58,880 bases of DNA from the NCBI RefSeq assembly GCF_001194135.2, contig NC_068986.1:76684848-76743727 (forward strand), given 5' to 3'. Of the stretch, positions 3,901 through 41,585 are shown in pieces. Source of the stretch: Octopus bimaculoides (Eukaryota). The translations under genes and the position numbers were made by a program. Position 1 is the stretch's first letter. Each line of letters starts with the position of its first letter. The notes below the pieces were generated by a model, which was not told where the DNA came from, ran no database searches, and worked only from the letters and a program-made list of their open reading frames with translations.

Positions 3901-6900
3901 TTAGATCTTATTTGAACTGTCCAGTCCATGCTAACATAGAAAGCAGATGTGAAAAAATAATGATGATGATAATGATGGCAACAACAATGATGTCTATATA
4001 TTGTGAATTAAAACATCAAGAATTTGAACAGATTTTAAGTATTTATAGAAATAACCTCAAAAAATCACAACTAAATGAGAATTATTCTTAGACCATATAT
4101 TGTTACACCATAGCTGTCACAAGCAAGTCAGTATGACATGATAGCTTGTACCTTTCTTTCACTAATCGGTTTTCAGTCTCTATGTAGTTGTGAGCAAAAA
4201 TAGACACTCCCTTAACCCTTTCACCTTTGATCCAGCAGAATAAGTTAAATATGAGCATTGAAGGGAGAGAGGGTTTCACTAGCTCTCAACTGAGTATACT
4301 GGACTAACATAAAATGAATGTTTTTGCTTGATCATGCAACATGCATCCTACAATCCAGGAATTGAGCCTCTAACCTTAAGATAATGATCTTAATATAGAA
4401 AATTGTAGAGCCATTTGATAAAGTTATTTTCTATAATGTCAAATCCTTTATCATCATCATTTTGATGTCCACTTTTCCATGCTTGCATTGTTTGGACAGA
4501 ATTTATTGAGGCAGATTTTCTATGGCTGGATGCCCTTCCTGCCACTAACCCTTACCTATTTCCAAGCAATTTAATGTTTCCCCATAGTCAGACATGTTTT
4601 CACAGTATGTTAGAAATAAATTACATTCTTTTACAACATTATGCAATGTCAAGACAAGGAGACACACACATATAAATGTCAAGCTTATTTCAGTTTCTGT
4701 CTACTAAATCCACTCTCTAGTCTTTGGTCAACCTGGGGCTAGAGTAGAAGACATCTACCCAAAGTGCCACACATTGGGACTGTACCCCAAACCTTGTGGT
4801 TGGGAAGCAAACTTCTTAACCACACAGCCACATCTGCACCTTTATTAAAATCTAAATTATTTCTAACAAATATATTACAGGTAGAGAACGACCATTATCT
4901 TCTGAAGGCTGAACATCTTGTTGAATTGCTCAGTAATAATGCCAGGAAACTACGTTGTTTCTTTCTGTTTAGTGATGTGATTGTTTGTACCAAACAAAAG
5001 TTCTAGTAAGTAATATTCTTTTTTTCTTATATTTATTTAATATTGTAATTGATGATCAGGTTTCCAATAGACCAATTACTGGGTCACAGTATTTCTATAT
5101 TTCTGACCATGAGAATGATAAGGAAGAGTCATTAAGACCATACAGAACAATTAGCAGTAGGGATTTTGTTTAAAAGGCATTGGTTTTCTAGATTTCTCTT
5201 CTTCCTCTTATATATATATATATATATATACACATATTTGTGTATTAAGGCTACCATTGGTTTCATGTTAAGAAAATATCTAATATCTTAACTATTTTTC
5301 AAGCTGAACACATGGAGATTCCTCCATGTGATCAGCTTGAGAAATTGTTGAAATATTAAGATATTTTCTTAACAATAAGCCAATGGTAACCTTAAAATAC
5401 ACAAATAAAAAGTTTTTACCCATGTGATGTTCAACACTCATTCTCATTGTTGAACATTTACACACACACACACTTATGGAAACTACCAAGAGCTTAAATA
5501 AAATGGAGATGCCAATTCACATATATAAAACATTCTTGGCTTCTAGGTCAATTAATTAATTACTAGTGTGTTAACAGCATATTGTTTCAATGTTATACTA
5601 TACAAGAGACCATAATCATAACTTAGTTAACACTGTGTAATAGACAAATGTTAACAGTTTGTTTTTACATGTAAGAGTACAACAAATTCGTGGTGGTGGT
5701 GGTGGATGTCCTTGACAGCACTGAACAACATGAAATCCCCTTGTTGGTAAATGTACAACTTTTATCATACACTAACCTGTAGATAGACAAAAAAAAGTGG
5801 ATACTCAGTCACTGATGAAATCCTAATGCAGAATTGAAACAAGTCTGGCTGATCCCTTTTTTTCTGTCCAGATATTTGCAAGCATTGACTCATGAGATGA
5901 AATGGTACATAATAGTGTTGTTTACTTTCATAAATTGATAAAGTGTTAAATAGATAGGAGTGGCTGTGTGGTAAGTAGCTAGCTTACCAATCACATGGTC
6001 CCGGGTTCAGTCCCACTGCGTGGCATCTTGGGCAAGTGTCTTCTACTATAGCCTCGGGCCGACCAAAGCCTTGTGAGTGGATTTGGTAGATGGAAACTGA
6101 AAGAAGCCCGTCGTATATATGTATATATATATATGTATGTGTGTGTGTATGTTTGTATGTGTGTGTTTGTCCCCCCAACATCGCTTGACAACCAATGCTG
6201 GTATGTTTATGTCCCCGTAACTTAGCAGTTCGGCAAAAGAGATCGATAGAATAAGTACTAGGCTTCTAAAGAATAAGTCCTGGGGTCGATTTGCTCGACT
6301 AAAAGGCGGTGCTCCAGCATGGCCGCAGTCAAAAGACTGAAACAAGTAAAAGAGTAAAAGAGTATTCTTTTATTCTTTTACTTGTTTCAGTCATTTGACT
6401 GTGGCCATGCTGGAGCACCACCCTGAAAGTTTTTAGTCAAGCAAATTGACCCTAGGACTTATTTTTTTAAAGCCTAGTACTTATTCTATCAGTCTTTTTT
6501 GCTGAACCACTAAGTTACAGGGATGTAAACACACCAAGACCAGTTGTCAAGCTGTGATGGTGGGGGGAGGGGCAAACACAGACACAAAGACACACACACA
6601 TAGATATATACATATATATGATGGACTTCTTTCAGTTTTTGTCTACGAAATCCACTCACAAAGCTTTGGTCAGCCTGAGGCTATAGTAGAAGACACTTGT
6701 CCAAGACGCCGCACAATGAGACTGAAGCTAGAACCTTGTGGTTGTGAAGCAGGTTTGTTACCATACAGTCACGCATACAAATACTATATGTAGGGCATGA
6801 GACATTTTGACAGGGCTGTTTTAGTATCCCTGATTCAACACTGACTTATTTGGCATTCAACATTTTAATGTTTCTCTCATTCTCCTCCTCTTCTTCTCCC

Positions 6901-9900
6901 TTCTCTCTCTCTGTTTATGTGTATGAGCATATTTCTCTTTATGTATATGAGGAGAGGGAAAGTGTTTATATCAATTGCATTCAATTGATAAATTATAATG
7001 TCTTTCATTCTCTCTATCTGTATGAGTATATTTTTGCTTTTGCACATGCATGCTTGTGTGTTTCTCTCCAATGCCAAAAAGTTCTGTTACAAAAATAGGT
7101 TCAGTATCGTGAATTTTATATATGTATATATAAATCCAATACAAGGAAAATAGGTTCCTCTTATAGGGATGAAAACATCCAATTTTTCACTGGCTTAACT
7201 ATCTAATACCCAATTTAGTAGAGAAAAACTTTGTGAGTAAGAACATGAATTTTTATAATTTTAATATGTGTAAGAATCGAAACAATTGTATGTAATTTGT
7301 ATTTAGTTTTTATTATTTATTATATTATTATAAGAATATAATATAATATAATATAACGTTAATAAATTAAAATTTTTGAATTGACAATTGTATATCTCCA
7401 TGCTGATGATAATGTTGATTTAGTGATGATAATGTCGATTTAGTGGTGGTGGTAGTGATAGTTTTGATGTCAGTAATGATGAGCATGATGAATCCATTTA
7501 TATCTTTCAGTCAAAAAGATTCATTCGATGTTAAATGGTTCATTCCAATATACAAGCTTGAATTTCATTCCAGTACAGACCATAGAGCAGGTAAATATTC
7601 TTCACATTTGCTTTATTTGTAGGAGAAAATCTTTGTTGCATGTCTTCTTATTGCCTGCAATGGTTTGTTTTTTCCTCACTAATTGATTTACAATCTAATT
7701 TCATATCTTTTAACCATGTTTTGTGTCCTATTGTATAACTATTTGTCATCAGTTTTAATTATCTTGTCTCCCATAACTTTAAGCTTTTAACATTCAAAAT
7801 TATTCTGTCACATGTAATGCTTATTCATTCATATTGTTTTGAATTAAGCATGGATTATCTTGTAGCTTCAAGATTTCGATGATTTGACAGTTTATTTTTA
7901 TAATGACATAGTAGGATAGGTGTGGGAGGCAAGATCTTGTCAGTTTCAACATAAAACAGATAGAACATTTTGGTTTGATATAGTCAGTTTAAATGCTAAA
8001 GGGTTAACCTATTTGCCTATTCTCTAATCTATTTACCTATTTTCTCACTCCATTTAACTAATCTCCCTTTCTATTTCCCTTTTTTTTTCCAAATCTGTTT
8101 ACGTGTTCACCAATTTACCTATCCACCAGTCTATTTGCCTATTCATTAATCTAATTACCTATTCATCAGTCTAGCTATTCACTAATCTATTTACTTATTT
8201 GCCAATATATTTATCTATTCTCTCACTCTTTTTACTTATCCTAGTCTCTAGGTCCAGTGTAAAGGGGCAAATGTTTTTGTAATATTTGGTGAATAAGAGA
8301 TAGGTCTCACCCCGTTCATTTTAAAACTTACTTTTTATTTAGAGTTCAATATATCCAATAATACACGATGAATGCCATGGGCCACTGAATTGTTGGGACA
8401 TCACTGAATACTTCTTAATTTCGTGTAGTGTATCTAGGACAAACATTGCAAGTCAACAAAATGCTTGTCAATGTTTATAACACAGTTGCCATTGACACTG
8501 CCAATAACATTAGTTACTACAAAGAATTGTGTCAGTTCTATGTTACCTCTTCATAGTTAGGCAGAGTAGGTCATTTCAGAGCTAAAAATGTTGGTCATTG
8601 ACACAAAATATTGCTAGTGACAAGATATAAATTGTTGATCTCTTGGTTAGTCACCCAGTAATCAAGCTTCACTCTCTATGCTTGCCATCAAATGATGATA
8701 TAATGCTAAAACAATATTTCTCTTTAATCTAATTTCTCATTTTTTTTTCTTTAATCTTATGAATCAGTTGTTTTAATCCCATTCCCTTTCTTTCCTACTT
8801 ATATCAACCCCTCTCTCTCATCTTCAACTTTGTCAGTTTATTAACTGTTTTCCTTCTACTTCCTGTCTTTTCTTTTTATTTTAATCAGTTTTGTCATTCC
8901 CTTGTGAAGTTGACTTGTAACCTGATTGTCTCACATCTGATCCTTAAAACTTCTCCCCCCAACTTTTCCATTCCAGTTTCTTTCTTTGTTGTTTATTTAC
9001 TCATCCCCCAAAATCATAATCCCTCCTCACTCTGTGTGTGTGTGTGTGTGTGTGTAGCAGCATCATTCCTGTAAAAGTGTAATAAATATAATAAATATGT
9101 ACTTTACAAAAGTATTGAATAATCCTTCAGGTTAATGTAAAATTGTTTTTATTTTAACTCAGTATTAAAAAACAAAGGCTGTGTGATAAGCTTGTTTCCC
9201 AACTACATGGTTCAGTCCCACTGCATGGCACCTTGGCCAAGGCCAACTAAAGCCTTGTGGGTGGATTTGGTAGACAGAAACTGAAAGAAGCCAATCTTGA
9301 CTGGTATTTTATTTTATCATTCCCAGAAGGATCAAAAGCAAAGTTGTCCTTGGCAAGATTTTAAATCAGAATGTAAGAAGCTAGAAGACAAGGCATTTTT
9401 GTCCAACATTCTACAATAATATAATCTAGGAAATATAATTATTTAGTAATGTTTATATGCCAACAGAATCTCGTTTCGAGCGAGATCGTTGCCAGTGCCC
9501 CTGGACTGGCTCTTGTGTGGGTGGCACATAAAATACACCATTTTGAGCGTGGCCGTTGCCAGTACCGCCTGACTGGCCTTCATGCCGGTGGCACGTAAAA
9601 GCACCCACTACACTCTCTGAGTGGTTGGCGTTAGGAAGGGCATCCAGCTATAAAAACTCTGCCAAATCAGATTGAAGCCTGGTGTAGCCATCTGGTTTCA
9701 CCAGTCCTCAGTCAAATCGTCCAACCCATGCTAGCATGGAAAGTGGATGTTAAACGATGATGATGATGATGAATGTGGCATACGTGTATCACATAAGGCT
9801 AGAGATGGTAGTGATGACCTCCTTTGCAAATGCTATATGGACACAAACTGTGTTTCGATAGCCAGCTGGAAAAGATGCTTTCCTGGGGCTAAAACAACAG

Positions 9901-10478: not shown

Positions 10479-13400
10479 TCTCTCTCTCTCTCACTCTCTC
10501 ACACACACACACACATGCACGCACAGCAAGGTGGTTGGTTGGCCTGCAGGCTCAGGTGTTGAAGATGGACCAGTTCTCTGTAGCTTGTGACAATTTTAAC
10601 CTCACAACATATACAAAAGAGACTGGTATATAAACCGTCTTTTCACTTACATCAACTACTCTTCTATATAATTCCTCTTAAAACTTTCTATTTCTTCATT
10701 GCAGATACAAATTATAAGTTTACAGAAACCATCGACGAATTAAAGAAAAGAATGAGCAGTATAGAAACAGAATTACGAAACAGAGTAAGTTCAGATTCCA
10801 CAGTCTTGTTTTTGTTTTTAAACCAAGATAAACAAGTTACAAATGAATATTCATAAAGTCCTGATAGATTAGCTATAGAATTTGGTATAATCAGGAATGT
10901 AAGAAAGTGGGTGATGATCTGCTTTAGTTATTAGTCCATAGAAAAATTCCAGTAAGAGTTCAGATGCTTTGGTCTCTTCTTTCTCGCAGTCTTCCTTACT
11001 CTCCAGCAAAGTGTGACATAGCAAAGACTGACTTTATTCTTCAGTTTCTCAATAACTACCAAGCTTTTACAAAGCTCATACACACATACATCTAAGATCA
11101 CATAACATGAAATATTGCCTGATTGATTGTTATGAAATCACTTACAGACATACTCTAACCTCTGGCCCACAGACATGATGGTGTCTCCTCTCTATGCCTT
11201 CCATGCTGCTACAATGACCTCTGTGCCTCCAAGTCAGCTGATCTTGTGTCACCTCCATTCGAGCACTCCCAATTCACTCATGTTGTCTCCTATCGTAATG
11301 TCTGTTCATAGATCTCACATCAACCATTACACATAATTCTTTCATTGGTTACTATTATTTTGGAACATCCATCTCCACTGTTAATTAGGTCACCTACATA
11401 ACAAAAGCCATTAACTACTTCTAGTGAGCCTTCCAGGCATTTGAGGAAATCTGTTTCATGTGCATTCTTAGTGCTTACTGCTCCTGAGCATCTACCATAT
11501 ACAAAGTCTATCTTCTCTATTAGCCTGCCTGTGACCACACATCTTTCATGTGTCCATTGTTTACATTGAGTACATCATATGGAATGTCTATCTACTTCCT
11601 TTCTGCATATCAAGCATCATCATTTCATCAATAATAGCAGAGTACTGTCTTCTTTCCTATTTACTAAAACTTTAGTATTTGCTAAGTTCACTTTCAGACC
11701 TCTCAATTCTACATTTGCTTATACATCTGTAATTTGTTCTCTTATTCTACTATGGATTTAGTTACGAGAACTAGGGGATCTAGGTTTTTTCATTCACAAA
11801 ATATGCATTTTTTTAAAAGGAAGTAAAAAATCTGAAAATTGGCTATAATAATGTAGCCTTCCAGTCTCATTGCTTTGAATGTATGATGTTGCAGAGAAAA
11901 AAGTTACAGAGGTTTAAAAATTGTAAAAACTGTGTATTTATAGACAATAGTGAGACAGAAATTTGCTGCGTTTAGCAGAGCAGTGTCAACTTTAAGGTTG
12001 TACCCTGTGAAATTTATAGTTTAGCATCTGACCTGTTCATTGTAGCTTTCTAAATAAACAGAAATATCTAATAAAATCAACATGTATCATCTTACTGTTT
12101 CTTTTGCTTCTTCATTAATTGTTTGATTTTATTACTTTTTTAAATTTGTTATATTAATATATTTGTCTTCATGTGTTTACTTCATGCGTATTTCAGTATT
12201 ATGTATACCTGTCATGTATTTGTGTACATCATTAATATATAAGTGCATGTGGATGTATGTATTCATATATAAGTTTATATGTACATTTATGCATTCATTT
12301 GTGTGTGTGTGTGAAGGGTGTGTCTGTCTCCAAAACTCCAAAGTTGAGTAATGTTTTCATGCTTGGATTTGTAAACTACAAGAATAAGACTGGTCAACAA
12401 AGAATTTGTCCCAAAGAAAAGAATACCTGTATCTTATACGTTTTTTCATGCAGAATTCAAAAATAATGTCAAATTATCTATATCACCCACAGTTTCTCTG
12501 TTCCATTATATCCTACTTAGTTCCTGTTACATGGGCTAAATTCCAGTTAAGCTGTTGAAATGTGAAGCTAATGGTTTAAGAAATACTCCTAATTTAAATT
12601 TTTATGAACAGAATTAACCTAGTGAAATCGTAAATCCAGCTAGCTGAGTCAATGAGTCCCAAAAATATATGAAATGAAAAATATATAAAAATATTAACAC
12701 AGAGAAGCACAGAAAAGTATGCAATATACTAACATAAGAAAAATTAAAGCAAAACACGCAGGTGAAGAGAATCTTGTGGTGTGAAGAATCAAATGTGAAA
12801 AATCAATGTAGACAACAGTGAACCACAACACAGTGTGCGGTTGTCATGGTAACAAGCTGCTAATGCCATGCTGTCTAGTGATTGGCCAAAATTACCCAAA
12901 TTTCCCAACTTTGATTCCAAATAACATCAGATTCTTTAATTTACAAGATAAAGTAATTAGTTGATCGTAATCAAAATTCAAAGTTGCATCAATGCACCAA
13001 AATTGAAAGCAATCTGATCAAAATTAAGTGGGGTTCATTTTGCAAATGAGAAAGACTAGGTCATCAGTATATAGGAATTCTCATAGACAGCTGATCTTAA
13101 ACTCTTCTGTTATATCCTGGAGGACAATGATTAATAGGAGACTGAAGATTGAACCTTGGTAGCCCCCTACTTGTATGCTAAATTTGTTGCTGTACTCATT
13201 GCTAACTCACACCTTGCTGTCTGTGCCTATATACGTGATTTGACGGCAGTCACAAGTTGCTCATTTACCCCTAGTTTTTATAGCAGTCACTAGATTACTA
13301 AGTGTAGAAGCTTGTCAGAAGTCTTTCACAGGTCACCATATGCTAAGTGCAGTGGCTTATGTCTAGCTGAATACTTCATACTTCTTCTACAGTTGTCTCA

Positions 13401-16999: not shown

Positions 17000-19291
17000 N
17001 NNNNNNNNNNNNNNNNNNNNNNNNNNNNNNNNNNNNNNNNNNNNNNNNNNNNNNNNNNNNNNNNNNNNNNNNNNNNNNNNNNNNNNNNNNNNNNNNNNNN
17101 NNNNNNNNNNNNNNNNNNNNNNNNNNNNNNNNNNNNNNNNNNNNNNNNNNNNNNNNNNNNNNNNNNNNNNNNNNNNNNNNNNNNNNNNNNNNNNNNNNNN
17201 NNNNNNNNNNNNNNNNNNNNNNNNNNNNNNNNNNNNNNNNNNNNNNNNNNNNNNNNNNNNNNNNNNNNNNNNNNNNNNNNNNNNNNNNNNNNNNNNNNNN
17301 NNNNNNNNNNNNNNNNNNNNNNNNNNNNNNNNNNNNNNNNNNNNNNNNNNNNNNNNNNNNNNNNNNNNNNNNNNNNNNNNNNNNNNNNNNNNNNNNNNNN
17401 NNNNNNNNNNNNNNNNNNNNNNNNNNNNNNNNNNNNNNNNNNNNNNNNNNNNNNNNNNNNNNNNNNNNNNNNNNNNNNNNNNNNNNNNNNNNNNNNNNNN
17501 NNNNNNAAACAAGCATACATACACAAATGAAGACTGTAACACATGACCATATATACACACACACACTTTACTTCACACAAGGACACATATGGAGACACAT
17601 GTCCACACATATGGAGATGCACATCCATACATACAAACACAGTACATAGTTGCAAAACACACACACACACAGACATGCACACACAAGGAGACAGAGGTAC
17701 ACACACACACACACAGACATGCATAAAAACACAAACACAGACATGCAAACACATGAATATGCAGAATACATACATACAAATATACACACGTATATACATA
17801 AGCACACACACATACATACATACACACACACACATACATACATACATACACACACATGCATACATACATGCATGTGTAGGCGCACGCACACACTAATTCA
17901 CACACATGCACACAAACAAACAAAAAGGAACGCAGTGTGAATAATGGACAGTCAATGACTATTGAAAAGAATGCAAGACGCAACGAAAATTTTAGAAAAA
18001 TAAAAAAGAAATAAGTGGAAATTTTACCGGTGAGTGTGTTAAATTATAAGGCACTAAAAGAGAATGACTCTCCCCAGACACAACAGAATATACTTCAACA
18101 CATGAACTCACAGAAAGAATCTTGCAAACCAAATCCCAAAACGAAATTGATTAACAATGTTTTTTGTTTGTCCATGTAGTGCATAGATGTAAAGATTTTT
18201 GTAACTTCCTACTCTTGAACATCCAACATAAAGCTGATCATGGTTGAAACAGGGCTCTGAATTTGTTGATGTTCATGGCAAAACTAAGACACACTGGAAA
18301 TTGAAGTTGTTTGAATTGAAATGGTACATTGTCTCCTGAGTCTGTGTGATGGAGGCTCTTGTATCTTATGTTCAGTTGTCTCCATGTGACAGAGGCTTGT
18401 GTTTGCATATCAAGCCCATTCTTTCTCTGTTCAAGTGTCGCCTGGGCTCACTACTGATACTTTGTGAGAGTCTTTCAATTTGTGCCTATATCATATTTAA
18501 AACCACTGCTCTTTCATAAATTGCTTTTCAATAATTATGGTTTTATTTTCAATTTTTCATTATCTAGCAACGAGAAATAGCACGACTTTCTGGTAGCTTG
18601 GAGTTCAAGTTGAAAGATGGCAAAAAAGTATATACCTTATTGATGTCTACAAATTATTCCCGTGAAGAATGGAAAGAAGCCATCATTTCTTTAAAAGATA
18701 AATGTAAGTTCTGACCCATCTGTTATTTCATTTTTGTACTCTTTTAAAATATTTTAAATCTCTAAACTCTAAGACTATTTAACACATTCAGAATAAGTAT
18801 GCCAAAAAAGAGGTAGACACTACATGGTCACTCAAGCTGTTAAAAATGGCAGCCAAATCTCTCTTAAATCATATCCTGTCATCTTAAAAAAAAAAAAAGC
18901 AAGTATATTGGATAACGTAGTCTGGATATATTATGTCTAGACATAAGACAGGATAATCAAGGCTGAAATGCTTCTGATTATAGGTCTACTGGTTAGGGCT
19001 GCTCTGGGCCAAGCAACAACTTTATTGTAAAAAACCATTAGTGATATGTTGAAGCAGGTGCATAAAACATACAAAGGTTGGGGTACAGATAAAAGAACTT
19101 CCTTCTTACTAAATGAGTTTACTGCAATCATAATTATGACTCAGTTATATTCCTAATGTATGTATTGTGTCTTCTGTTTCTATAACTGAATGTGTGTGTA
19201 TGTACCACTCTTATAAATATCATTGTGTTTTCATTTGGTCTGTGCCATGTAAAGAAAGATAACTTCAATCTTAATGTGGTTACTCCCTTAG

Positions 19292-19378: not shown

Positions 19379-22070
19379 ACATTTGAGTTCAGCCCCATAC
19401 AATATGCAGGCTTTAAAGTTGTTTGGAGCTGAATCAAACTGTACTATATGTAGCTCCTACAAAATGTTTTGAGTGCCGCTTTCTTGTGTTTGTCCACTCA
19501 CTCACGTATGCGTGTGTGTGCATATGTATATATGTGCCACATAAAAAGCACCCAGCACATTCTGTAAAGTGACTGGTGTTAAGGAAGCTCATTCAGCCGT
19601 AAAAACCAAACCAAATCAGACTGGATCCTGGTGCAGCTCTCCTGCTTACCAGCTCTGGTCAAACTGTCCAACCCATGCCATCATGGAAAATGGACATTAA
19701 AGAATGATGATGATGATGATGATGATATATAATATACCATATTTCTTTCTTCATTTAGCTTTTCAAGACTGTAACTACACAACATCAGATATCCAGCAAA
19801 TAGTAACAAATTGTAAAAAGGTAGGTTTTTCTTTATTCTGCTATTATTCTACAATATCAGGTAATCCTTCTTTACATACTTGTTGATTAATCTGAACATT
19901 AAAGAGAGCTGCTATATGGTAACTTGACCTGTTAGTAATAACAACTATATTTCTCTCATCTTACACATTACCATCTTGAAATGAGAAGGGTGCATTCACT
20001 GGATAATGTAATTTATATATGCAGTGTCTGAGAGAAGGTAGGAACAGTCATAACTAGAATACTTTTTAGTCATAGGTTTATACAGTTAGTCATGACTTGT
20101 GGCTGAACAACAACAGCAACACCAAAAATGGTTCCAACTATCATTGCCCTCACCAATGTTATCCTTATCTGTGTTGTTGTCATTCAGCTTCTTATCACCA
20201 TCTTATTGGACTGGGGCATGTGAAATTAAGTGTACTACCCAGAGCCATAACAAAATCTGTGTAGGAAATTCATTTTTGAAGAAACTGATCTATAAATCCA
20301 ACAATACCTTATTTACTCAATCATTTTAATAGATCAACTGAATATTTTTTGTTTTATTTCATTTACATAGACAGTGGAATGTAGAATTAGATCACCTAAC
20401 AAAATACCTTGTGGTATTTAGTTAATCCTTTGGCATTCTGAGTACAACTCCTACCCAGGTCAACTTTTTCTTTCATGCTTTTGAAGGTTGATAGAATAGG
20501 TGCTAGTGAAATATTGGAAGTTGGATTGATTCTGTCAACTTTATTCTACCCCATCATAGCAACAGTCAAGTGTCTGAAACAAATAAAAGAATAGAATAAT
20601 TTAAATCATGTGAATTAAATTTTTAAATTAGTTTCACAGAAAACTGATCCTTAAAACTGTTTTAAATTCTGAATATCAAATTCTAGATACCTTTTGGTGA
20701 AAATCTTTATCTTGCTGCATTAGGGTTCAACTCATCTCTATCTAAATTCTCTTGATGTAAACATTGGTTCCATTTTCAACCATGTACCAACCATTTGTAA
20801 TTAATATAGCCATAAGCATTTCAATCATGAAAACCTAATTCAGATTGAGGCTGAAATCCATTTCTGTCAGTACAACACATCCAATGAATAAATCTGGAAA
20901 TATTTCAAAGATTTTCTTAAAATTACAAGATTCCAAGTTTATGAAGTTTTATCTATTCATGCAAAAGTCCACAAAGATTAGAAAGTTTTCTTTTCGTTTG
21001 TGTGATAAGAAGTTTGTTTCCCAACCACGTGATACTCGGTTCAGTCCCACTGCATGGCATCTTAGGGAAGTGTCTTCTACAATAGCCTTGGGCTGACCAA
21101 AGCCTTGTGGGTGCAGTTCGTAGATGGAAATTGAAAGGGTCCTGTCATATATATTTATGTGTATGTGTCTTTGTGTCTGTGTTTGTCCACCACCATCACT
21201 ACTTGACAACTGATGTTGGTGTGTTTATGATCCTATAACTTAGTTGTTCAGCAAAAGCAACCAATAGAATAAGTACCAGGTTTTAAAAAAATAAGTACTG
21301 GGGTCAATTCATTCAACTAAAAATTCTTCAATGTGGTGCCCCGGCATGGCCACAGTCTAATGACTGAAACAAGTAAAATATAAAAGATGAAAGCATGTTA
21401 ATTAATTTTTAGAGATTGATTTTTGAGCCTTTATCTTATTTTTGTTAATGATTTCAAATCGTCTGATATTTCTAATGATTTTAAATTCATTTTAAATTTT
21501 TGTTTTTCTTCCATTTTTTTCAGTTACCAAGCATAATCAACACAGTATTTTCACAGAAAGGTAAACAAAACAGTCCCCTTGATGACTTTATCCAGTTTCA
21601 TTGTCAAATAATATTTAAGATTTGATAATGAATGTTTAATAGTAAATTGTGGACGATATGATTCATGGACAGGATTAATGTCAAAAACTAAATTCTTTAC
21701 CATAGTTTTTTCTAAGCAAATTTTCACAACAGCTAAAATTAAGCCAATGTGAATGTTGAAGTGTTATAATTTCGATTCAATTTTCATTTCATCCTTTCAA
21801 GTCATTAAAATAACTTGAGATATATTTAATTATAAATAAACTGAACGGAATTTTAGTACCATGGTTATGGTTCTAACACATTGTAAATTTACATCTATAT
21901 TCTTGTAAATTTACATCTAAAATTTTTTTCTTGTTTCCTCTACCCCTTAAAATGACTTTTTCGTGTCCATGGTTGTTTTCGAAACTGTAACCATTTATAT
22001 TAATTCATCAAATAACTTTCAAATTTGCAATCTCTCCCTCTAAAATAGTAATCCCTTCCCTTGTTTCTTG

Positions 22071-25596: not shown

Positions 25597-26562
25597 TTAG
25601 ACTCGGCAATGAAACCCCGGTCTCGCGCCATTTCCGCTCTACTGGTCATTCATTACAACACCTGTTTGTGTTCAGATTGTCTTTGCACAGAGGCCATCCG
25701 GACTCCCGCCTTCACCGTGAACAGGAATTGATCTTCACTCCTTTGCACCACATGGGCTCAACTCCTCTCTCCTCTTCATATGACTCCCTACTTCTTCTCT
25801 CTTCATGTGGCACCTTCTTCCTCACTTCACTCCTACCCACCTCTCCTATCTTCTCTTGCCTTGACACCTACTTTCTCTCGTCACTCCTATCCACCTTCTC
25901 CCTTCATTGATGCCACCTCCACATATCCCACTCCCACATGCCCAAGTCCTACCCCTACATCCTCACCCCAAACCCACACTCACCACCACACCACACCACA
26001 TCACCCCCATCCACACCACTCCACAAACAGGAGCACTGACCACTTTCCACCACCCACATCACACACCATCATTCACAAACCCACACATTACAGACACACA
26101 CACTTACACACGCACACATCCTCATATCAGTCACTAGCCCCTATCCACACACTTACACACTCTTACATACACACACACATGCACCTTTTTTAGGATCACC
26201 AATACTTTATTATCTCCCCTTCTTCCTAGCTCTCCTGTCCAATGACCTTTTCCCAACCAGTTGCCATGATTGACTGCTAAATCTACAAGTTTTTTTATTC
26301 CCTCTCTGCTTATTTCCTCGTATTCCTTTCTGTTGAGGAGCATAGGCTTGAAATGTAAAAGACTTTCTCACCTTCCCAAACATCAAACTAATACACTTGC
26401 TTGTTTATACACCGATCTTCATCTTGTTTTTCTGTAAATTTCAACGAGACCGATAGAATAAGTACTAGGCTTACAAAGAATAAGTCCCGGGGTTGATTTG
26501 CTCGACTAAAAAGGCGGTGCTCCAGCATGGCCGCAGTCAAATGACTGAAACAAGTAAAAGAG

Positions 26563-26609
<47 letters not shown>

Positions 26610-28336
26610 ATATATCTATCTATTTATCTATCTATCTATTTATATATATCTATATATATATATACACACACACACATATATGTTAATATTTAGCATGACA
26701 TATGTATGTGTTAATATTTGGCATGGCATACACATATACATGCTCATATTTGACAGTCCTGCTCAGGTTATCTTTGTTCTGATATTTTTCTCAAAGGTGG
26801 ATAAAATAAAGTACCAGTCATGTATTGATGTCAATGAAATCAATTATTTCCCACCCTCTCAACATTTCAGGATTTGGGTCTATGAAAGTAATCAATAATA
26901 CCATATATGTTTGACATTGAATATAGCTGAAAGTGAATATACCTTTCTACTCAAGGCGTAAAATTTTGGGGGAGGGGACCAGTCGATTCGATCAACTCCA
27001 GTACGCAAGTAGTACTTAATTTATTGACCCCAAAAGGATGAAAGGCAAAGTCGACCTCAGCAGAATTTGAACTCAGAATGTAAAGACAGACGAAATACAG
27101 CTAAGCATTTCACCCAGCGTGCTAATATTTCACTGAAAGTGAATATATTTCATGTTTGAGTACTAATGCAAGCATGTCTGTGCGACTGAAAAGTTCACTT
27201 CCTAGCCATGTAGTTTGGGGTTCAGTCTCACTATTGCACCCTGTGGGTTCGGGGGTAGGACTGGGGTATGTGGGAGTGGGATATGTGGTCATATTGAGTT
27301 CTAGTATTTATTTCAGTCAGGCACTTATTTCATTGATTTCTCTTTAGGGAATCACTAAGTTCATAGTTGTGTGGTAAGAAGCTTGCTTCCCAACTACATG
27401 GCTCAGGGTTCAGTCCCACTGTGTGATACCTTGGGCAAGTGTCTTCTACTATATCTTTGGTCTGACTAAAGCCTTGTGAGTGGATTTGGTTCACGGAAAC
27501 TGAAAGAAGCCCATCATATATATGTATGTATGTCCTTGTCCTTTTGTCTGTGTTTGTCCCTCCCACTACTACTTGACAACTGGTGTTGGTGTATTTACGT
27601 CCCCATAACTTACCAGTTCAGCAAAAGAGGCTCATAGAATAAGTATCAGGCTTTAAAACAAAATAAGTACTGGGGTCGATACATTCAACTAAAAATTCTT
27701 GAAAGCAATGCCTCAGTACAGCTGCCATTTAATGACTGAAACAAGTAATAAAAATAAAAGATACAGGATGCAACTTAACATTCTGGTTTACATTGGTAAC
27801 TATAAACAAAGACACATATATATTATTATAATAAATTCACATATATATTTCTCCCTAATAATTTCTATAATGCTATTCACGTTTTCATTTTTCCCTTTTA
27901 CAGCTAAGTAAAGACTGGTTATCTAATTTCACCCGGAAGACGATTTCTATGAATAAGGTATGTATTCTAAGAGTTTTTATCGGTTTTTGTAACATTAAAA
28001 TTATTTAGTCAGCATGAATTCAGAGATTTTTTTTGCTTTCTTTGACTTATGATTTTGAATTTCTTATTAAAATAATTATGACCTGAATTTGTCATCTTCT
28101 ATGTAAACCTTCCTCTGGGTATTTTCTTAAAATGTTGGGTAGATGTCTTATTATTGCTAATGTATTAACATGTGTGTCAATAAACAAGAATGCCTATGTA
28201 AACATACAGTTCCATATCTCGAGCAAAAAATAGTCCTGTTTTTACTTTATAAGATTGTCGCAAAGATAATACAAGGATATCCAAACACCTAGTAATGCAA
28301 TGAACAGTGTTGTTAATGTTAATGACGATAATAATG

Positions 28337-40640: not shown

Positions 40641-41585
40641 GCTAGAGAAACAGGGAAACCAGCCCTATGTTTCTTATGGAATAATGTGGACTAATTAACC
40701 ACCATCTTATGAAAAATAAAGGTTACATCTCACAGTGTAGTCCCAGATATACAAAAAGAAAAAGAAGCAAACAAACATCAGGCATGATTGTGTAGTTAGA
40801 AGCTTGCCTTGTAATCATGTGGTTTCAGGTTCAGTCTCAGTGTGTGACACCTTGGGCAAGTGTCTATGTGTGTGTATACCTGTGGGTGTACATCACTGCC
40901 ACTGTGTGACAACCAGTGTTGATTTGCTTATGTCCCCGTAACTTAGTGGTTCAATAAAAAGGAACTGATAGAATATGTACCAGAGTTTAAAATAATTACT
41001 AGGCTTGATCTGTTTCACTAAAACCCTTCAAGGCAGCATTCCAGCATGCCATAGTTTCCTTGCTCACTCGATGGAGAAGGGATTGGGCCATTGCTGAGTG
41101 ATGGTTCATTATCTGGTGTGAAGTGTGTGGTGCATGTCGTGCACCTTGATAGGTGCCGACACAGCCAATGCACAACCCTTAATCTGGTTGCAGTTCAATG
41201 ACTGAAACAGATAAAAGATACTTTATGGGCTGAAATGCTATTGATTATTGTTCTTCTTAATCAGAAGTGATTTGGAGCTAGACAAAAGCTCCTTATAAAT
41301 CTGAAATCCATGTGGTTCTAAATGAAATCAAATTCTAATGTTTCTTTTCTTTTCTTTTCTAGCGTCCATGAGTATTCCTCCCAAAATAAGATGACTAATG
41401 GCAACCTATCTGTGATTTTCGGACAGTCTCTGATGCAACCAGCACCGACACCGGAGCCATCACCAGCAACGGAACCAGGTTCGGCACAAGAGGCTTTAGC
41501 TTACATGAATGCTCTTCACCAGAATAATATTCTGAAATATCTCTTGGACTTAAAATGCTCTGGAAAAAACTTTCTTAAACCATGA
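871..41585 (+). CDS. ABR: ABR/BCR-family RhoGEF-PH-C2-RhoGAP gene, 5'-partial, 17 coding exons
   Basis: join(871-978,4881-5005,7511-7590,10705-10784,14743-14811,18568-18703,19759-19820,21524-21560,23354-23422,25073-25269,27904-27957,30485-30594,33547-33608,34801-34878,35321-35461,36991-37096,41363-41585). All introns are GT..AG, phases are compatible, and the total of 1737 nt is a single open frame ending TGA. Motif order matches ABR/BCR: TPKSHPDY (DH end), [11 protein letters not shown] and KWFIP (PH), [20 protein letters not shown] (C2), [26 protein letters not shown] (RhoGAP). Confidence 0.92.
1916..2235 (+). mobile_element. tRNA-derived SINE (family with ttgagcaaggcacttta...ttgctccagttcactcagc core)
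   Basis: A-box-like tggcgcagtgg and B-box-like tttgattccc; related degenerate copies near 36045-36200 (+), 40030-40230 (+) and 56520-56680 (-). Confidence 0.65.
4450..4835 (-). mobile_element. SINE: tRNA head, central gatttggtagacggaaactgaaagaagc domain, RTE-like (GAT)n tail
   Basis: Reverse complement of the 13938-14378 family; (TCA)n tail at 4450. Confidence 0.7.
4881..5005 (+). CDS. ABR: ABR-like exon: PH domain start ([41 protein letters not shown])
   Basis: ttacag acceptor, gtaagt donor at 5006, phase 0-2; RKLRxxFLFxD motif. Confidence 0.9.
5235..5407. repeat. Long fold-back inverted repeat (83/86-nt arms, 4-nt loop)
   Basis: 74 of 83 left-arm bases pair Watson-Crick by manual alignment. 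Confidence 0.9.
5786..5868 (+). ncRNA. Putative minimal type I hammerhead ribozyme (intronic, sense strand)
   Basis: Stem I TCAGTCA(5805-11)/TGGCTGA(5846-52); core CTGATGA 5812-18; stem II AATCC/GAATT with one C-A mismatch; GAAAC 5836-40; AA; GTC cleavage triplet 5843-45; stem I extends about 15 bp beyond a TAC bulge. Confidence 0.6.
5957..6363 (+). mobile_element. tRNA-derived SINE (MetaSINE-like central domain, gactgaaacaagtaaaagag tail), well preserved
   Basis: A box tggctgtgtgg, B box gggttcagtcc, domain ccttgtgagtggatttggtagatggaaactgaaagaagcccgtcg (resembles the Meta domain, from recollection). Confidence 0.85.
6364..6776 (-). mobile_element. Same SINE family, inverted, tail-to-tail with 5957-6363
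   Basis: Starts cttttacttgtttcagtcatttgactgtggccatgctggagcacc, the reverse complement of the tail. Confidence 0.8.
7511..7590 (+). CDS. ABR: ABR-like exon: PH ([27 protein letters not shown])
   Basis: tttcag / gtaaat, phase 2-1; KWFIP corresponds to ABR KWYIP. Confidence 0.9.
7783..8003. mobile_element. piggyBac-type MITE, about 220 bp, TTAA target
   Basis: TTAA at 7779-82 and 8004-07; right end aatgctaaaggg; homologous to 32348-32567. Confidence 0.7.
8345..8620 (-). mobile_element. Possible PIF/Harbinger transposase relic
   Basis: Minus-strand fragments [13 protein letters not shown] and FSDV..QWP resemble Harbinger motifs NVIGAIDG, LQ.VC and F.DV...WPGS; frameshifted and weak. Confidence 0.35.
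9467..9772 (+). mobile_element. RTE-tailed SINE-like element with 67-nt internal tandem units and (GAT)n tail
   Basis: Near-identical to 57292-57519 and 58556-58880; ttggcgttaggaagggcatccagct...gttaaacgatgatgat tail. Confidence 0.8.
10400..10520. repeat. (CT)n/(CA)n microsatellite
   Basis: Direct inspection. Confidence 0.95.
10705..10784 (+). CDS. ABR: ABR-like exon: PH insert coiled coil ([27 protein letters not shown])
   Basis: ttgcag / gtaagt, phase 1-0. Confidence 0.85.
10960..11580 (-). mobile_element. RTE-clade LINE relic, post-RT and 3' part
   Basis: Minus frame [50 protein letters not shown] is typical of RTE ORF C-terminal regions; the 10960-11310 part is less certain. Confidence 0.7.
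13080..13910 (-). mobile_element. RTE-clade LINE reverse transcriptase relic
   Basis: Minus-strand fragments [44 protein letters not shown] and [20 protein letters not shown]; many stops. Confidence 0.8.
13938..14378 (+). mobile_element. SINE: tRNA head, central domain, RTE-like (GAT)n tail
   Basis: Same head as 5957-6115 but 3' end gaaggacatccagctgtagaaaatctgcc...gatgatgat. Confidence 0.75.
14743..14811 (+). CDS. ABR: ABR-like exon ([23 protein letters not shown])
   Basis: pyrimidine tract plus tatag / gtaagt, phase 0-0; aligns by recollection with the ABR segment RAIERLKKK. Confidence 0.8.
15040..15270 (+). mobile_element. RTE RT fragment
   Basis: tttgttgacctagagaaggcctttgatagg = [10 protein letters not shown]; flanking MKVTE and KVRV. 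Confidence 0.7.
16921..17925. repeat. (CA)n microsatellite and CA-rich low-complexity DNA spanning an assembly gap
   Basis: (CA)n 16921-16999, N run 17000-17506, degenerate CA/TA repeats to about 17925. Confidence 0.95.
17930..18335 (-). mobile_element. Helitron relic: RepHel helicase C-terminus and probable 3' flank
   Basis: Minus frames [22 protein letters not shown] and [32 protein letters not shown] (18150-18333) match Helitron PIF1-helicase C-terminal motifs; the 17930-18150 extent is inferred. Confidence 0.75.
18568..18703 (+). CDS. ABR: ABR-like exon: PH end ([45 protein letters not shown])
   Basis: tctag / gtaagt, phase 0-1; PH C-terminal helix with REEW. Confidence 0.9.
19759..19820 (+). 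CDS. ABR: ABR-like exon ([21 protein letters not shown])
   Basis: tttag / gtaggt, phase 1-0. Confidence 0.82.
20998..21390 (+). mobile_element. tRNA-derived SINE, same family as 5957-6363
   Basis: Head, central domain and gactgaaacaagtaaaa tail all recognisable. Confidence 0.8.
21524..21560 (+). CDS. ABR: ABR-like 37-nt exon ([12 protein letters not shown])
   Basis: long T tract plus cag / gtaaac, phase 0-1; needed to keep the frame. Confidence 0.75.
23354..23422 (+). CDS. ABR: ABR-like exon: C2 start ([24 protein letters not shown]); alternative start 23351
   Basis: AAG-TAG tandem acceptor / gtaaga donor, phase 1-1; matches the C2 first strand (G.L.V.lH...G). Confidence 0.85.
25073..25269 (+). 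CDS. ABR: ABR-like exon: C2 core ([18 protein letters not shown]...[23 protein letters not shown]...LLGKSALA)
   Basis: tctag / gtaagc, phase 1-0; strong match to the BCR/ABR C2 domain. Confidence 0.95.
25400..25595. repeat. Compound (GT)/(TA)/(CA) microsatellite
   Basis: Direct inspection. Confidence 0.95.
25594..26446 (+). mobile_element. Penelope-like element relic: GIY-YIG endonuclease C-terminus and 3' tail
   Basis: [19 protein letters not shown]...REQELIF then frameshifted FAPHGLN, typical of PLE endonuclease ends; tail ctgttgaggagcataggcttgaaatgt. Confidence 0.7.
26942..27132 (-). mobile_element. tRNA-derived SINE (aaggatgaaaggcaaagtcgacctc family) with 15-bp TSD
   Basis: Direct repeat ctgaaagtgaatata at 26927-26941 and 27133-27147. 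Confidence 0.85.
27363..27762 (+). mobile_element. tRNA-derived SINE, same family as 5957-6363
   Basis: Head, central domain and tail recognisable. Confidence 0.8.
27904..27957 (+). CDS. ABR: ABR-like exon ([18 protein letters not shown])
   Basis: ttacag / gtatgt, phase 0-0. Confidence 0.85.
28372..28756 (-). mobile_element. Two tandem SINE copies (aaggatgaaaggcaaagt family)
   Basis: Core repeated at about 28470 and about 28645; (AAT)n at 28330-28370. A similar tandem pair lies at 32765-33200. Confidence 0.75.
28790..29295 (+). mobile_element. R4/Dong-like (RLE-type) non-LTR retrotransposon 3' relic
   Basis: [35 protein letters not shown] (CCHC knuckle), YRHTQEKV, degenerate PD..D motif, [37 protein letters not shown]; flanked by (TAA)n. 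Confidence 0.8.
29593..29674 (+). mobile_element. Possible pogo/Tc1-mariner terminal fragment
   Basis: tactgtatttttcgatatacaagtc...ggtcaacttat resembles pogo-type ends from recollection; no partner end seen. Confidence 0.3.
30485..30594 (+). CDS. ABR: ABR-like exon ([36 protein letters not shown])
   Basis: ttctag / gtaagt, phase 0-2; TGVFGV marks the start of the RhoGAP domain. Confidence 0.92.
32348..32567. mobile_element. piggyBac-type MITE, 220 bp, TTAA target
   Basis: TTAA at 32344-47 and 32568-71; ends cccattaaca / ggctaaaggg; homologous to 7783-8003. Confidence 0.75.
33547..33608 (+). CDS. ABR: ABR-like exon: RhoGAP ([21 protein letters not shown])
   Basis: ttttag / gtatgt, phase 2-1; P.I...C..EIEKRG motif. 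Confidence 0.92.
33800..34190 (+). mobile_element. RTE LINE 3' relic
   Basis: [12 protein letters not shown] and [24 protein letters not shown] resemble the RTE terminal region (RRLRWYGHV). Confidence 0.65.
34801..34878 (+). CDS. ABR: ABR-like exon: RhoGAP arginine finger ([26 protein letters not shown])
   Basis: tttag / gtaagt, phase 1-1; GIYRVSG catalytic Arg intact. Confidence 0.95.
35321..35461 (+). CDS. ABR: ABR-like exon: RhoGAP ([47 protein letters not shown])
   Basis: tttcag / gtaagt, phase 1-1; [11 protein letters not shown] motif. Confidence 0.95.
36413..36634. repeat. Branched fold-back inverted repeat
   Basis: 50-nt outer arms with 45/50 WC pairs; inner stems of 13/16 and 12/13. 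Confidence 0.9.
36991..37096 (+). CDS. ABR: ABR-like exon: RhoGAP ([35 protein letters not shown])
   Basis: gaacag / gtaagt, phase 1-2; LP..N...L..L..HL motif. Confidence 0.92.
40785..41220 (+). mobile_element. tRNA-derived SINE with an unrelated insert of about 125 bp in its tail
   Basis: Tail ccagcatgcc...gcagttcaatgactgaaac is interrupted at about 41052-41178. Confidence 0.65.
41363..41585 (+). CDS. ABR: ABR-like last coding exon ([27 protein letters not shown]...KNFLKP*)
   Basis: long pyrimidine tract plus tag, phase 2 entry; NKM..NL..IFG motif; TGA at 41583-41585. Confidence 0.92.

What the first reader, a model, noticed from the sequence alone, without database searches (positions are those of the whole stretch)
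5786..5868. Near-canonical type I hammerhead ribozyme, sense-oriented in an ABR-like intron
The core residues are intact and in order: CUGAUGA (5812-18), R-Y closing pair A5819-U5835, GAAA (5836-39), C5840-G5843 and a GUC cleavage triplet (cut after 5845). Stem I is 7 bp (one G-U), then a UAC bulge, then about 15 more bp (gacaaaaaaaagtgga / tcccttttttt-ctgtc), the geometry natural type I hammerheads use for loop 1-loop 2 contact. Stem III is only 2 bp with a 2-nt loop, as in minimal (newt or Penelope-type) hammerheads that cleave as dimers. No coding retroelement flank was recognised, so this may be a retrozyme/Penelope remnant or an exapted intronic ribozyme like those known in amniote introns. 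Caveats: stem II has a C-A mismatch and the AA loop is non-palindromic, so activity may be low.
Basis: partly seen in the sequence, partly recalled or inferred. Interest (0 to 1): 0.85.

Follow-up and report, generated by a model that had tools for sequence, protein, structure and literature searches.

The report
Decayed hammerhead ribozyme motif in intron
A single hairpin in a 2.5-kb intron of a BCR/ABR-like gene carries every catalytic-core base of a type I hammerhead ribozyme, but two of its three helices are too weak to make self-cleavage likely, so it is most probably a dead, solitary relic of the hammerhead-bearing mobile elements common in animal genomes.

Summary
The motif is in the sequence exactly as described. 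CUGAUGA lies at 5812-18, GAAA at 5836-39, C-AA-G at 5840-43 and UC at 5844-45. Helix I has 7 bp, followed by a UAC bulge and about 15 more pairs. It lies sense-oriented in intron 5006-7510 of a + strand BCR/ABR-like gene.

It is more than chance for this window. A covariance model built from four published, experimentally characterised animal type I hammerheads scores it 23 bits (E about 2e-4), against 14 bits for the next hit. A descriptor found no equally good hit in 200 Mb of simulated sequence.

"Near-canonical" overstates it:
- No Rfam hammerhead model reports it, even at E<=10.
- Pair 10.1-11.1 is A-U, not G-C.
- Helix II is unstable (+1.9 kcal/mol, C.A mismatch).
- Helix III cannot form in a monomer, and its AA loop is not palindromic, so the dimer route is also lost.
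- The minimum-energy fold sequesters core bases.

The element is single-copy in the window. It has no tandem repeat, no partner hammerhead and no reverse transcriptase or endonuclease nearby.

Best reading: a decayed solo relic of a retrozyme or Penelope-type hammerhead (about 0.6). Conservation could not be tested because no cephalopod sequence was reachable. Interest is low.

The parts
5786..5801 (+). distal helix I, 5' arm (GACAAAAAAAAGUGGA)
   Evidence: Pairs with 5853-5868 in the MFE and centroid folds.
5802..5804 (+). UAC bulge in helix I (position of 'loop 1')
   Evidence: Unpaired in the folds. It occupies the same place as the UUC/U internal loop of axolotl Ax353 and the CGA of mussel Mg353.
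5805..5811 (+). helix I, 5' strand (UCAGUCA)
   Evidence: 7 bp with 5846-5852; pair probabilities 0.75-0.99. The proximal GUCA/UGGC, including the G.U pair, is identical to the mussel Mg353 hammerhead.
5812..5818 (+). core C3-A9, CUGAUGA
   Evidence: Read directly; matched by model R1.
5819..5835 (+). helix II hairpin: AAUCCU / AGAAUU, C5822.A5832 mismatch, loop AAUGC
   Evidence: Read directly. +1.9 kcal/mol on its own, pair probability about 0.15. An A5832G change would give -3.9 kcal/mol.
5836..5839 (+). core G12 A13 A14 A15.1 (GAAA)
   Evidence: Read directly.
5840..5843 (+). helix III remnant C15.2-AA-G16.2
   Evidence: One C-G pair plus A15.1-U16.1 closing a 2-nt loop. Pair probability 0.0 in the monomer. 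The loop is not palindromic.
5844..5845 (+). U16.1 and C17; predicted cleavage site after 5845
   Evidence: Read directly. Cleavage itself is inferred, not shown.
5846..5852 (+). helix I, 3' strand (UGGCUGA)
5853..5868 (+). distal helix I, 3' arm (UCCCUUUUUUUCUGUC)
5778..5785 (+). possible outer extension of the hairpin (UGUAGAUA); overlaps one copy of a 5-nt direct repeat AGATA (5781-85)
   Evidence: Pairs with 5873-5880 after a CAGA bulge in the fold of 5720-5935. This is weak: it includes 2 G.U pairs.
5873..5880 (+). possible outer extension, 3' side (UAUUUGCA); the second AGATA is at 5870-74
   Evidence: direct repeat read.
5006..7510 (+). host intron (phase 2) of the BCR/ABR-like gene
   Evidence: Donor GTAAGT at 5006-5011 and acceptor ...tttcag ending at 7510. 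Splicing joins ...CTKQKF|Y|[18 protein letters not shown] in frame.
4881..5005 (+). upstream exon (PH domain part: [41 protein letters not shown])
   Evidence: weak Pfam PH hits.
7511..7590 (+). downstream exon ([26 protein letters not shown])

Best explanation
The hairpin 5786-5868 (perhaps 5778-5880) is a solitary, mutationally decayed copy of a metazoan type I hammerhead ribozyme. Such ribozymes are carried by non-LTR retrozymes and by the pseudo-LTRs of Penelope-like elements. This copy sits by insertion in a 2.5-kb intron of a BCR/ABR-like gene and is transcribed in sense as part of the pre-mRNA.

The catalytic core and helix I with its bulge and distal stem are intact. Three other features would have to support catalysis, and all are degraded:
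- Helix II is A/U-rich with a C.A mismatch.
- The 10.1-11.1 pair is A-U.
- Helix III is 2 bp with a non-palindromic AA loop.

The monomer cannot close helix III. The dimer route used by newt and axolotl hammerheads is lost, and no second copy is nearby. I therefore infer that it cleaves the ABR pre-mRNA very poorly or not at all, and that it has no function.

Shown: the motif, its statistical excess, its weak helices, its single-copy state in the window, and the gene context. Inferred: descent from a mobile-element hammerhead, and inactivity.
For: - The full core and type I topology are present.
- It is the only descriptor hit in the window, with 0 equally good hits in 200 Mb of simulated sequence.
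- Model R1 was built only from coral, mussel and axolotl retrozyme hammerheads (sequences from PMC7229834 suppl. table 2; alignment; model). It gives 23.0 bits, E 1.6e-4, which is 8.7 bits above the next hit.
- Features not imposed by any descriptor agree with validated animal hammerheads. The proximal helix I GUCA/UGGC, with G.U at 1.3-2.3, is as in mussel Mg353. A 3-nt 5' bulge followed by a long distal helix is as in axolotl Ax353. GAAAC-AA-GUC is one base from Ax330's GAAAC-AU-GUC.
- The defects look like decay. A single change, A5832G, would give a -3.9 kcal/mol helix II. A5842U would give a -6.0 kcal/mol palindromic helix III duplex, against +0.2 now.
- The literature reports that most such motifs in animal genomes are solo, heterogeneous copies, thought to derive from truncated elements (PMC4209133). 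Counts run from thousands to more than 100,000 per genome.
- Retrozymes appear to be selected against in Xenopus introns (preprint 10.64898/2026.07.22.740005). That fits an inactive copy being tolerated here.
Against: - No other copy, family or consensus could be examined, so descent from a mobile element is inferred from resemblance only.
- No Rfam hammerhead model reports the site at any threshold available.
- There is no RT or GIY-YIG remnant in 5004-9800, no retrozyme-size tandem repeat in the intron and no second hammerhead in 58.9 kb.
- G10.1-C11.1 and loop-3 palindromy, both typical of real families, are absent.
- The element ends neatly at the base of the hairpin. A randomly truncated retrozyme fragment would not be expected to do that.
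- I found no published report of hammerheads in cephalopods in the held library.
Confidence: 0.6

Rival explanations
1. Coincidence. The hairpin is an ordinary inverted repeat of unrelated origin (a foldback or MITE-like element, or A-run/T-run pairing), and its 34-nt loop happens to contain CUGAUGA ... GAAA ... UC in register.
For: - Hairpins with a 7-bp inner stem and at least 14 of 16 further pairs occur at 11 loci in this window.
- At the model's E-value, a genome of several Gb would hold a few chance hits to core plus helices.
- The relaxed descriptor occurs by chance 0.025 times per window.
- Helix II is thermodynamically not a helix.
- A-U at 10.1-11.1 and a non-palindromic loop 3 are what random sequence would give.
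- Rfam is silent.
- The site is single-copy with no mobile-element context.
- The first stage may have scanned many windows.
Against: - Rough estimate from base composition (my own arithmetic, not a tool result): the joint requirement of the core in exact register at both ends of the loop of a long hairpin is about 3e-8 per hairpin and strand. That is about 6e-7 per window given the 11 hairpins.
- No equally good hit appeared in 200 Mb of simulation.
- The 23-bit score stands far above the window's background.
- There are extra, unforced resemblances to mussel and axolotl hammerheads.
Confidence: 0.17
2. A working self-cleaving ribozyme. It would be either an exapted intronic hammerhead that modulates ABR pre-mRNA processing, like the amniote RECK/CTCL/DTNB hammerheads, or a still-active mobile-element copy. 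It would cut after C5845 with the help of the loop 2-bulge contact, protein chaperones, or trans-dimerisation.
For: - The core is intact.
- It is in sense orientation in an intron.
- Helix I is stable, with a bulge placed where type I hammerheads make the loop 1-loop 2 contact.
- Hammerheads of Penelope-like elements and newts, with equally poor helix III, are thought to need dimers or host factors in vivo.
Against: - Helix II is +1.9 kcal/mol with pair probability about 0.15.
- Helix III has pair probability 0.
- The MFE fold pairs G5814-A-U with G5843-U-C and is 3.3 kcal/mol better than the hammerhead fold.
- The dimer helix III would contain tandem A.A mismatches (+0.2 kcal/mol).
- There is no partner copy.
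- No conservation data exist.
Confidence: 0.08
3. Another kind of hairpin RNA gene hosted in the intron: a box C/D snoRNA (UGAUGA at 5813-18 as box C, CUGA at 5849-52 as box D) or a microRNA precursor.
For: - It lies in an intron in sense orientation, as many animal snoRNAs and mirtron-like hairpins do.
- Rfam gives noise-level hits to several C/D families that use exactly these boxes (snosnR66 15.9 bits, E 8.9; sR11, sn2343 and SNORD74).
- The hairpin has z = -3.25.
Against: - All these hits are 25-55 bits below the families' gathering scores.
- Only 30 nt separate the boxes, which leaves no room for a guide and C'/D' boxes.
- The terminal stem is 10 nt away from box C, and the 'D box' is itself paired inside helix I.
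- For a pre-miRNA, the stem is an A8:U7 run and the apical region is 34 nt.
- The MFE of -20.5 kcal/mol for 83 nt is weak, and no miRNA family matches.
Confidence: 0.04

Closest known systems
Canonical type I hammerheads of metazoan non-LTR retrozymes (coral Amil224, mussel Mg353, axolotl Ax330/Ax353; Cervera & de la Pena 2020, PMC7229834)
   Same: - Same core and type I topology.
- Helix I has a small 5' bulge or internal loop followed by a long distal stem.
- The proximal helix I GUCA/UGGC, with a G.U pair, is identical to mussel.
- Helix III is very short, of the amphibian kind (C-NN-G).
- A model built from these four sequences scores the site 23 bits.
   Different: - Helix I is 7 bp rather than 6.
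- Helix II has 6 positions with a C.A mismatch and A-U at 10.1-11.1, instead of a 4-bp G-C-closed stem.
- Loop 3 is AA, not palindromic.
- There is no 170-400-bp tandem repeat and no second copy.
Minimal hammerheads of Penelope-like elements (Cervera & de la Pena 2014, PMC4209133)
   Same: - Helix II is longer than usual (6-8 bp in that family).
- Helix III is weak or absent.
- In vitro activity is low.
- Most genomic copies are solo and heterogeneous.
   Different: - That family has a short helix I (4-5 bp), a conserved extra base between positions 9 and 10.1, G10.1-C11.1, and palindromic 15.2-16.2/loop 3.
- Here helix I is long, 10.1-11.1 is A-U, and the loop is not palindromic.
- No pseudo-LTR, RT or GIY-YIG lies in the flanks.
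Conserved intronic hammerheads of amniotes (RECK, CTCL/C10orf118, DTNB; reviewed in PMC6155905; Rfam Hammerhead_HH9/HH10)
   Same: A type I motif, sense-oriented inside an intron of a protein-coding gene, resembling retroelement hammerheads.
   Different: - Those are defined by deep conservation and conserved tertiary contacts.
- Conservation here is untestable with the data available.
- The Rfam HH9/HH10 models do not report this site.
Newt satellite 2 / ASBVd-type dimer-dependent hammerheads
   Same: Helix III is too short to form in a monomer, which implies a double-hammerhead mechanism.
   Different: The dimer needs a self-complementary 15.1-16.1 segment and two copies in one RNA. Here ACAAGU is not self-complementary, and the window holds only one copy.

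Membership tests
Hammerhead ribozyme (class) | Conserved core C3 U4 G5 A6 N7 G8 A9 / G12 A13 A14 / A15.1-U16.1 / H17, in order | tested here: met
   CUGAUGA 5812-18, GAAA 5836-39, U5844, C5845.
Hammerhead ribozyme (class) | Three helices flanking the core | tested here: inconclusive
   Helix I is solid: 7 bp with pair probability 0.75-0.99. Helix II has 5 pairs plus a C.A mismatch, is +1.9 kcal/mol, and has pair probability about 0.15. Helix III is 2 bp with a 2-nt loop and pair probability 0.
Hammerhead ribozyme (class) | Site-specific self-cleavage 3' of position 17 | not testable with these tools
   Needs in vitro transcription or RNA-end mapping.
Hammerhead ribozyme (class) | Score at or above the gathering threshold of an Rfam hammerhead model (Hammerhead_1, _3, _II, HH9, HH10) | tested here: not met
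   No match at gathering threshold. No hammerhead family is listed even at E<=10 on 251 nt or on 61 nt.
Canonical metazoan type I hammerhead (retrozyme type) | Resemblance to validated members under a sequence-plus-structure model | tested here: met
   Model R1, built from 4 published ribozymes, gives 23.0 bits, E 1.6e-4. It is the top hit by 8.7 bits.
Canonical metazoan type I hammerhead (retrozyme type) | Helix I of 6 bp and helix II of 4 bp with interacting loops (PMC4209133) | tested here: not met
   Helix I is 7 bp before the UAC bulge. Helix II has 6 positions with a mismatch. Whether the bulge U and the loop 2 A residues can still make the tertiary contact is not testable here.
Canonical metazoan type I hammerhead (retrozyme type) | G10.1-C11.1 base pair | tested here: not met
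   A5819-U5835.
Canonical metazoan type I hammerhead (retrozyme type) | Short helix III (1-2 bp) capped by a 2-4-nt palindromic loop | tested here: not met
   The length fits (C-G plus a 2-nt loop), but the loop AA is not palindromic. The self-duplex is +0.2 kcal/mol, against -6.0 for ACAUGU.
Canonical metazoan type I hammerhead (retrozyme type) | Embedded in tandem repeats of about 170-400 bp, at least two units | tested here: not met
   There is no such repeat in the intron (TRF). The site is single-copy in the window (blastn) and there is no second motif.
Penelope-like element min-hammerhead | Lies in a pseudo-LTR next to an RT / GIY-YIG ORF (or is a solo derivative of one) | tested here: not met
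   No Pfam domain is found in any of the six frames of 5004-9800. Solo status cannot be linked to a PLE family without the genome.
Penelope-like element min-hammerhead | Extra nucleotide between 9 and 10.1, long helix II, short helix I (4-5 bp), palindromic 15.2-16.2/loop 3 | tested here: not met
   Only the long helix II fits. Helix I is 7 bp plus about 15 bp, and loop 3 is not palindromic.
Exapted intronic hammerhead (amniote HH9/HH10 kind) | Sense orientation within an intron of a host gene | tested here: met
   The site lies in intron 5006-7510 of a + strand BCR/ABR-like gene.
Exapted intronic hammerhead (amniote HH9/HH10 kind) | Conservation of the motif in orthologous introns across species | not testable with these tools
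   No cephalopod ABR or DNA was reachable. The protein search returned no close orthologue, ORF look-ups were not on record, and metagenome scans were empty.
Box C/D snoRNA | Box C and box D brought together by an adjacent terminal stem, with guide region(s) between; usually 60 nt or more | tested here: not met
   The boxes are 30 nt apart, the stem is 10 nt from box C, and the CUGA is paired within helix I. Rfam hits are only 10-16 bits against cut-offs of 39-70.

The most novel reading that the evidence does not exclude
The motif is a domesticated, functional hammerhead that cuts the ABR pre-mRNA within intron 5006-7510, helped by the bulge-loop 2 contact or by host factors. That would make it the first conserved intronic hammerhead described in an invertebrate. 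A second, smaller possibility is that the roughly 84-103-nt hairpin, with its flanking AGATA repeats, is itself a very small hairpin-shaped mobile element that carries a hammerhead.
Probability: 0.06. Interest if true: 0.6.

Novelty: new member of a known kind. Interest (0 to 1): 0.2.

Why it matters
If the best reading is right, this is an ordinary genomic fossil. Animal genomes hold thousands to more than 100,000 type I hammerhead motifs, and most are solo and degenerate.

Its modest value is twofold. It hints that hammerhead-bearing retroelements once lived in this lineage, apparently cephalopod, for which I found no published hammerhead report. It is also a worked example of a motif with a perfect core that probably does not cut.

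Only if it proved conserved and active would it matter more, as an invertebrate counterpart of the amniote intronic hammerheads.

Tried and rejected
- Rfam 15 on the whole window at gathering thresholds, then at E<=10 on 251 nt and on 61 nt, gave no hammerhead family. Only noise from C/D snoRNA and CRISPR-repeat models appeared.
- I looked for orthologous introns through the host protein. The search with concatenated ABR exons returned BCR/ABR relatives at no more than 41% identity and no cephalopod, so no orthologous locus could be fetched.
- Exact-product look-ups of two window ORFs were not on record.
- Two exact-pattern scans of JGI metagenome contigs for relatives gave 0 hits each.
- A six-frame Pfam scan of 5004-9800 for RT/GIY-YIG found nothing.
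- A within-window search for other copies, tandem units or a partner hammerhead found none.
- The second-best model hit, 47141-47177, has CACUGAUGA but no GAAA, so it is not a hammerhead.
- The C/D snoRNA and pre-miRNA readings were considered and rejected on geometry (see rivals).
- The fold of the wider region 5720-5935 is not significantly structured (z = -1.34), so there is no support for a long retrozyme-like rod.
- The 5-nt direct repeat AGATA flanking the hairpin could be a target-site duplication, or it could be chance. This is unresolved.
- The bacterial promoter/terminator scan is irrelevant here and found nothing of note.
Full report
**What is there.** The sequence at 5786-5868 (+) reads GACAAAAAAAAGUGGA-UAC-UCAGUCA-CUGAUGA-AAUCCUAAUGCAGAAUU-GAAA-CAAG-UC-UGGCUGA-UCCCUUUUUUUCUGUC.
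- the core strands CUGAUGA (5812-18) and GAAA (5836-39);
- the A5819-U5835 pair that closes helix II;
- C5840-AA-G5843, U5844 and C5845;
- a 7-bp helix I (5805-11 / 5846-52, one G.U pair);
- a UAC bulge (5802-04);
- about 15 further pairs between 5786-5801 and 5853-5868.

The 83-nt stretch folds to -20.5 kcal/mol, z = -3.25, and none of 200 shuffles folds as well. In a longer fold the stem may continue for 8 more pairs (5778-85 / 5873-80) after a CAGA bulge. The wider region 5720-5935 is not unusually structured (z = -1.34).

**Context.** The window looks like animal nuclear DNA: 33% G+C, microsatellites, assembly gaps and many copies of one SINE-like repeat. From memory, the SINE resembles the abundant octopus SINE. 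I could not verify the organism. Among the ABR hits that carry an organism name, the one with the best E-value is from a gastropod.

On the + strand lie exons of a BCR/ABR-like gene:
- a PH-domain exon at 4881-5005;
- a second PH exon at 7511-7590;
- a C2 exon near 25.0-25.3 kb;
- RhoGAP exons near 34.8, 35.3 and 41.3-41.58 kb.

These rest on Pfam, BCR homologues and the ORF lists. The donor GTAAGT at 5006 and the acceptor ending at 7510 join the two PH exons in frame.

The same intron holds a 173-nt foldback (5234-5406) and an inverted pair of SINE copies (5955-6777). The hammerhead hairpin is not part of the SINE, because the other SINE copies align only from about 5960 onward.

**Is it more than chance?** A descriptor requiring CUGAUGA, a helix II of at least 3 pairs, GAAA, at least 1 pair in helix III, UH, and a helix I of at least 5 bp hits only this site on both strands.

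In 200 Mb of first-order Markov sequence with the window's composition, that descriptor gave 43 hits, or 0.025 per window. No hit had helix I >=7 bp together with helix II >=4 or >=5 pairs.

Rfam's own hammerhead models report nothing, at gathering thresholds or at E<=10 on 251 nt or 61 nt. I therefore built an independent covariance model. It uses four experimentally characterised retrozyme hammerheads whose sequences are printed in supplementary table 2 of PMC7229834: coral Amil224, mussel Mg353, and axolotl Ax353 and Ax330.

That model never saw this locus. It scores 5806-5851 at 23.0 bits, E = 1.6e-4 for the window. With all filters off there are 21 hits at E<=10, so the calibration is about 2-fold optimistic. 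The runner-up scores 14.3 bits and lacks GAAA.

For this window the motif is therefore clearly non-random. At that rate, however, a genome of several Gb would still contain a few chance hits.

The long distal stem adds evidence, but less than it first seems. Hairpins with a 7-bp inner stem and at least 14 of 16 further pairs occur at 11 loci in the window. From base composition I estimate about 3e-8 per hairpin and strand for a full core in exact register at both ends of such a hairpin's loop. That is my own arithmetic, not a tool result, and on it the joint event is very unlikely.

**Resemblance beyond the core.** Three features that no descriptor imposed match validated animal ribozymes:
- The four proximal pairs of helix I (GUCA / UGGC, with G.U at 1.3-2.3) are identical to the mussel Mg353 hammerhead. 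Axolotl has CUCA / UGGG.
- A 3-nt bulge on the 5' strand followed by a long distal helix is the geometry of axolotl Ax353 (6 bp, UUC/U, then at least 12 bp).
- GAAAC-AA-GUC differs by one base from Ax330's GAAAC-AU-GUC.

These comparisons were made after the fact against four references, so they carry only moderate weight.

**Why "near-canonical" is too generous.** Cervera & de la Pena (PMC4209133) list four marks that distinguish real families from random hits: covarying families, an extra base after A9, a G10.1-C11.1 pair, and palindromic 15.2-16.2/loop 3. Here 10.1-11.1 is A-U, loop 3 (AA) is not palindromic, and no family is available.

The thermodynamics point the same way:
- Helix II is +1.9 kcal/mol and does not fold on its own. 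Its pairs have about 0.15 probability in the ensemble.
- The helix III pairs have probability 0.
- The minimum-energy fold pairs G5814-A-U with G5843-U-C, sequestering core bases. It is 3.3 kcal/mol better than the hammerhead-constrained fold.

The dimer mechanism that rescues newt and axolotl hammerheads needs a self-complementary A15.1-U16.1 segment and two copies in one RNA. ACAAGU self-pairs at +0.2 kcal/mol, against -6.0 for ACAUGU. The window holds no second motif and no tandem repeat of retrozyme size.

Each defect is one transition or transversion away from a well-behaved form. A5832G would give a -3.9 kcal/mol helix II, and A5842U would restore the palindrome. Mutational decay of a once-functional copy would look like this.

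**Mobile-element context.** There is none. No Pfam domain appears in any frame of 5004-9800, and no related sequence appears elsewhere in the window. This does not contradict a retroelement origin, because the literature describes most genomic motifs as solo copies thought to derive from truncated elements. It does mean that origin is inferred. A 5-nt direct repeat AGATA (5781-85 and 5870-74) brackets the hairpin. It could be a target-site duplication or chance.

**Most likely mechanism.** A hammerhead-bearing retroelement fragment, of retrozyme or Penelope type, was inserted into or retained in this intron. Its core and helix I survive, while helices II and III have decayed. It is transcribed as part of the ABR pre-mRNA, folds mainly into a long hairpin that occludes part of the core, and is removed with the intron without cutting it (confidence about 0.6).

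The rivals are:
- coincidence within an unrelated hairpin (about 0.17);
- a functional or exapted self-cleaving ribozyme (about 0.08);
- another hairpin RNA such as a C/D snoRNA or pre-miRNA (about 0.04), rejected on geometry.

**What could not be done.** Conservation and copy number are the decisive tests, and both need cephalopod genomes that none of the collections here contain. The ABR protein search found no close orthologue, two ORF look-ups were not on record, and two metagenome scans were empty. The held literature contains no report of hammerheads in cephalopods. The one paper that mentions both describes cephalopod Naiad PLE remnants, a clade that lacks canonical hammerheads.

**Verdict.** This is a new but ordinary member of a very common kind of sequence. 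It is probably inactive, and interest is low (0.2).

Noticed in passing
window 5955-6777: Two copies of a roughly 400-nt SINE-like repeat lie head to head and form a large inverted repeat (205-nt arms at 80%, inner arms 57 nt at 93%). Further copies are at about 20999-21387, 27368-27761, 4668-4831 (-), 26443-26564 and elsewhere. From memory it resembles the abundant octopus SINE; this is not verified.
   Followed up: partly
window 5234-5406: A 173-nt foldback with 48-nt and 37-nt arm pairs at 83-86%. It is flanked by (TA)n on the left and (CA)n on the right, is MITE-like, and sits in the same intron 380 nt upstream of the hammerhead motif.
   Followed up: no
window 5781-5785 and 5870-5874: A 5-nt direct repeat AGATA immediately brackets the hammerhead hairpin. 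It may be a target-site duplication of an ~84-bp insertion, or it may be chance.
   Followed up: partly
window 5813-5818 and 5849-5852: The hammerhead core contains UGAUGA, and helix I contains CUGA. Rfam C/D snoRNA models therefore give noise-level hits here. This is a reminder that a box C/D-like pattern can be mimicked by a hammerhead.
   Followed up: yes
window 52224-52358, 54027-54186, 58000-58110 (+): These are exons of a MAT1/MNAT1-like gene (CDK-activating kinase assembly factor; Pfam MAT1 E 5.8e-12 and a RING finger). It lies downstream of, and on the same strand as, the last BCR/ABR-like exon at 41322-41582.
   Followed up: partly
window 43004-43336 (-): A 111-aa open frame gives a weak, below-cut-off match to the piggyBac-type transposase zinc finger (zf-Tnp_2, E 5.9e-4). 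It is probably a DNA-transposon remnant.
   Followed up: partly
window 9456-9647 (-), 57231-57446 (-), 58460-58831 (-): Three copies of another repeat share an open frame (…[32 protein letters not shown]…). It has no Pfam match.
   Followed up: no
window 11323-11574 (-): An 84-aa cysteine-rich open frame ([12 protein letters not shown]…) resembles the zinc-finger tails of retrotransposon ORFs. It has no Pfam match at E<=0.01.
   Followed up: partly
window 47141-47177 (+): This is the second-best hit of the hammerhead model (14.3 bits). It contains CACUGAUGA but no GAAA strand, so it is not a hammerhead.
   Followed up: yes
window 17000-17506 and 45662-45871: Runs of N (assembly gaps) lie inside the BCR/ABR-like gene region and in the intergenic region.
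   Followed up: no
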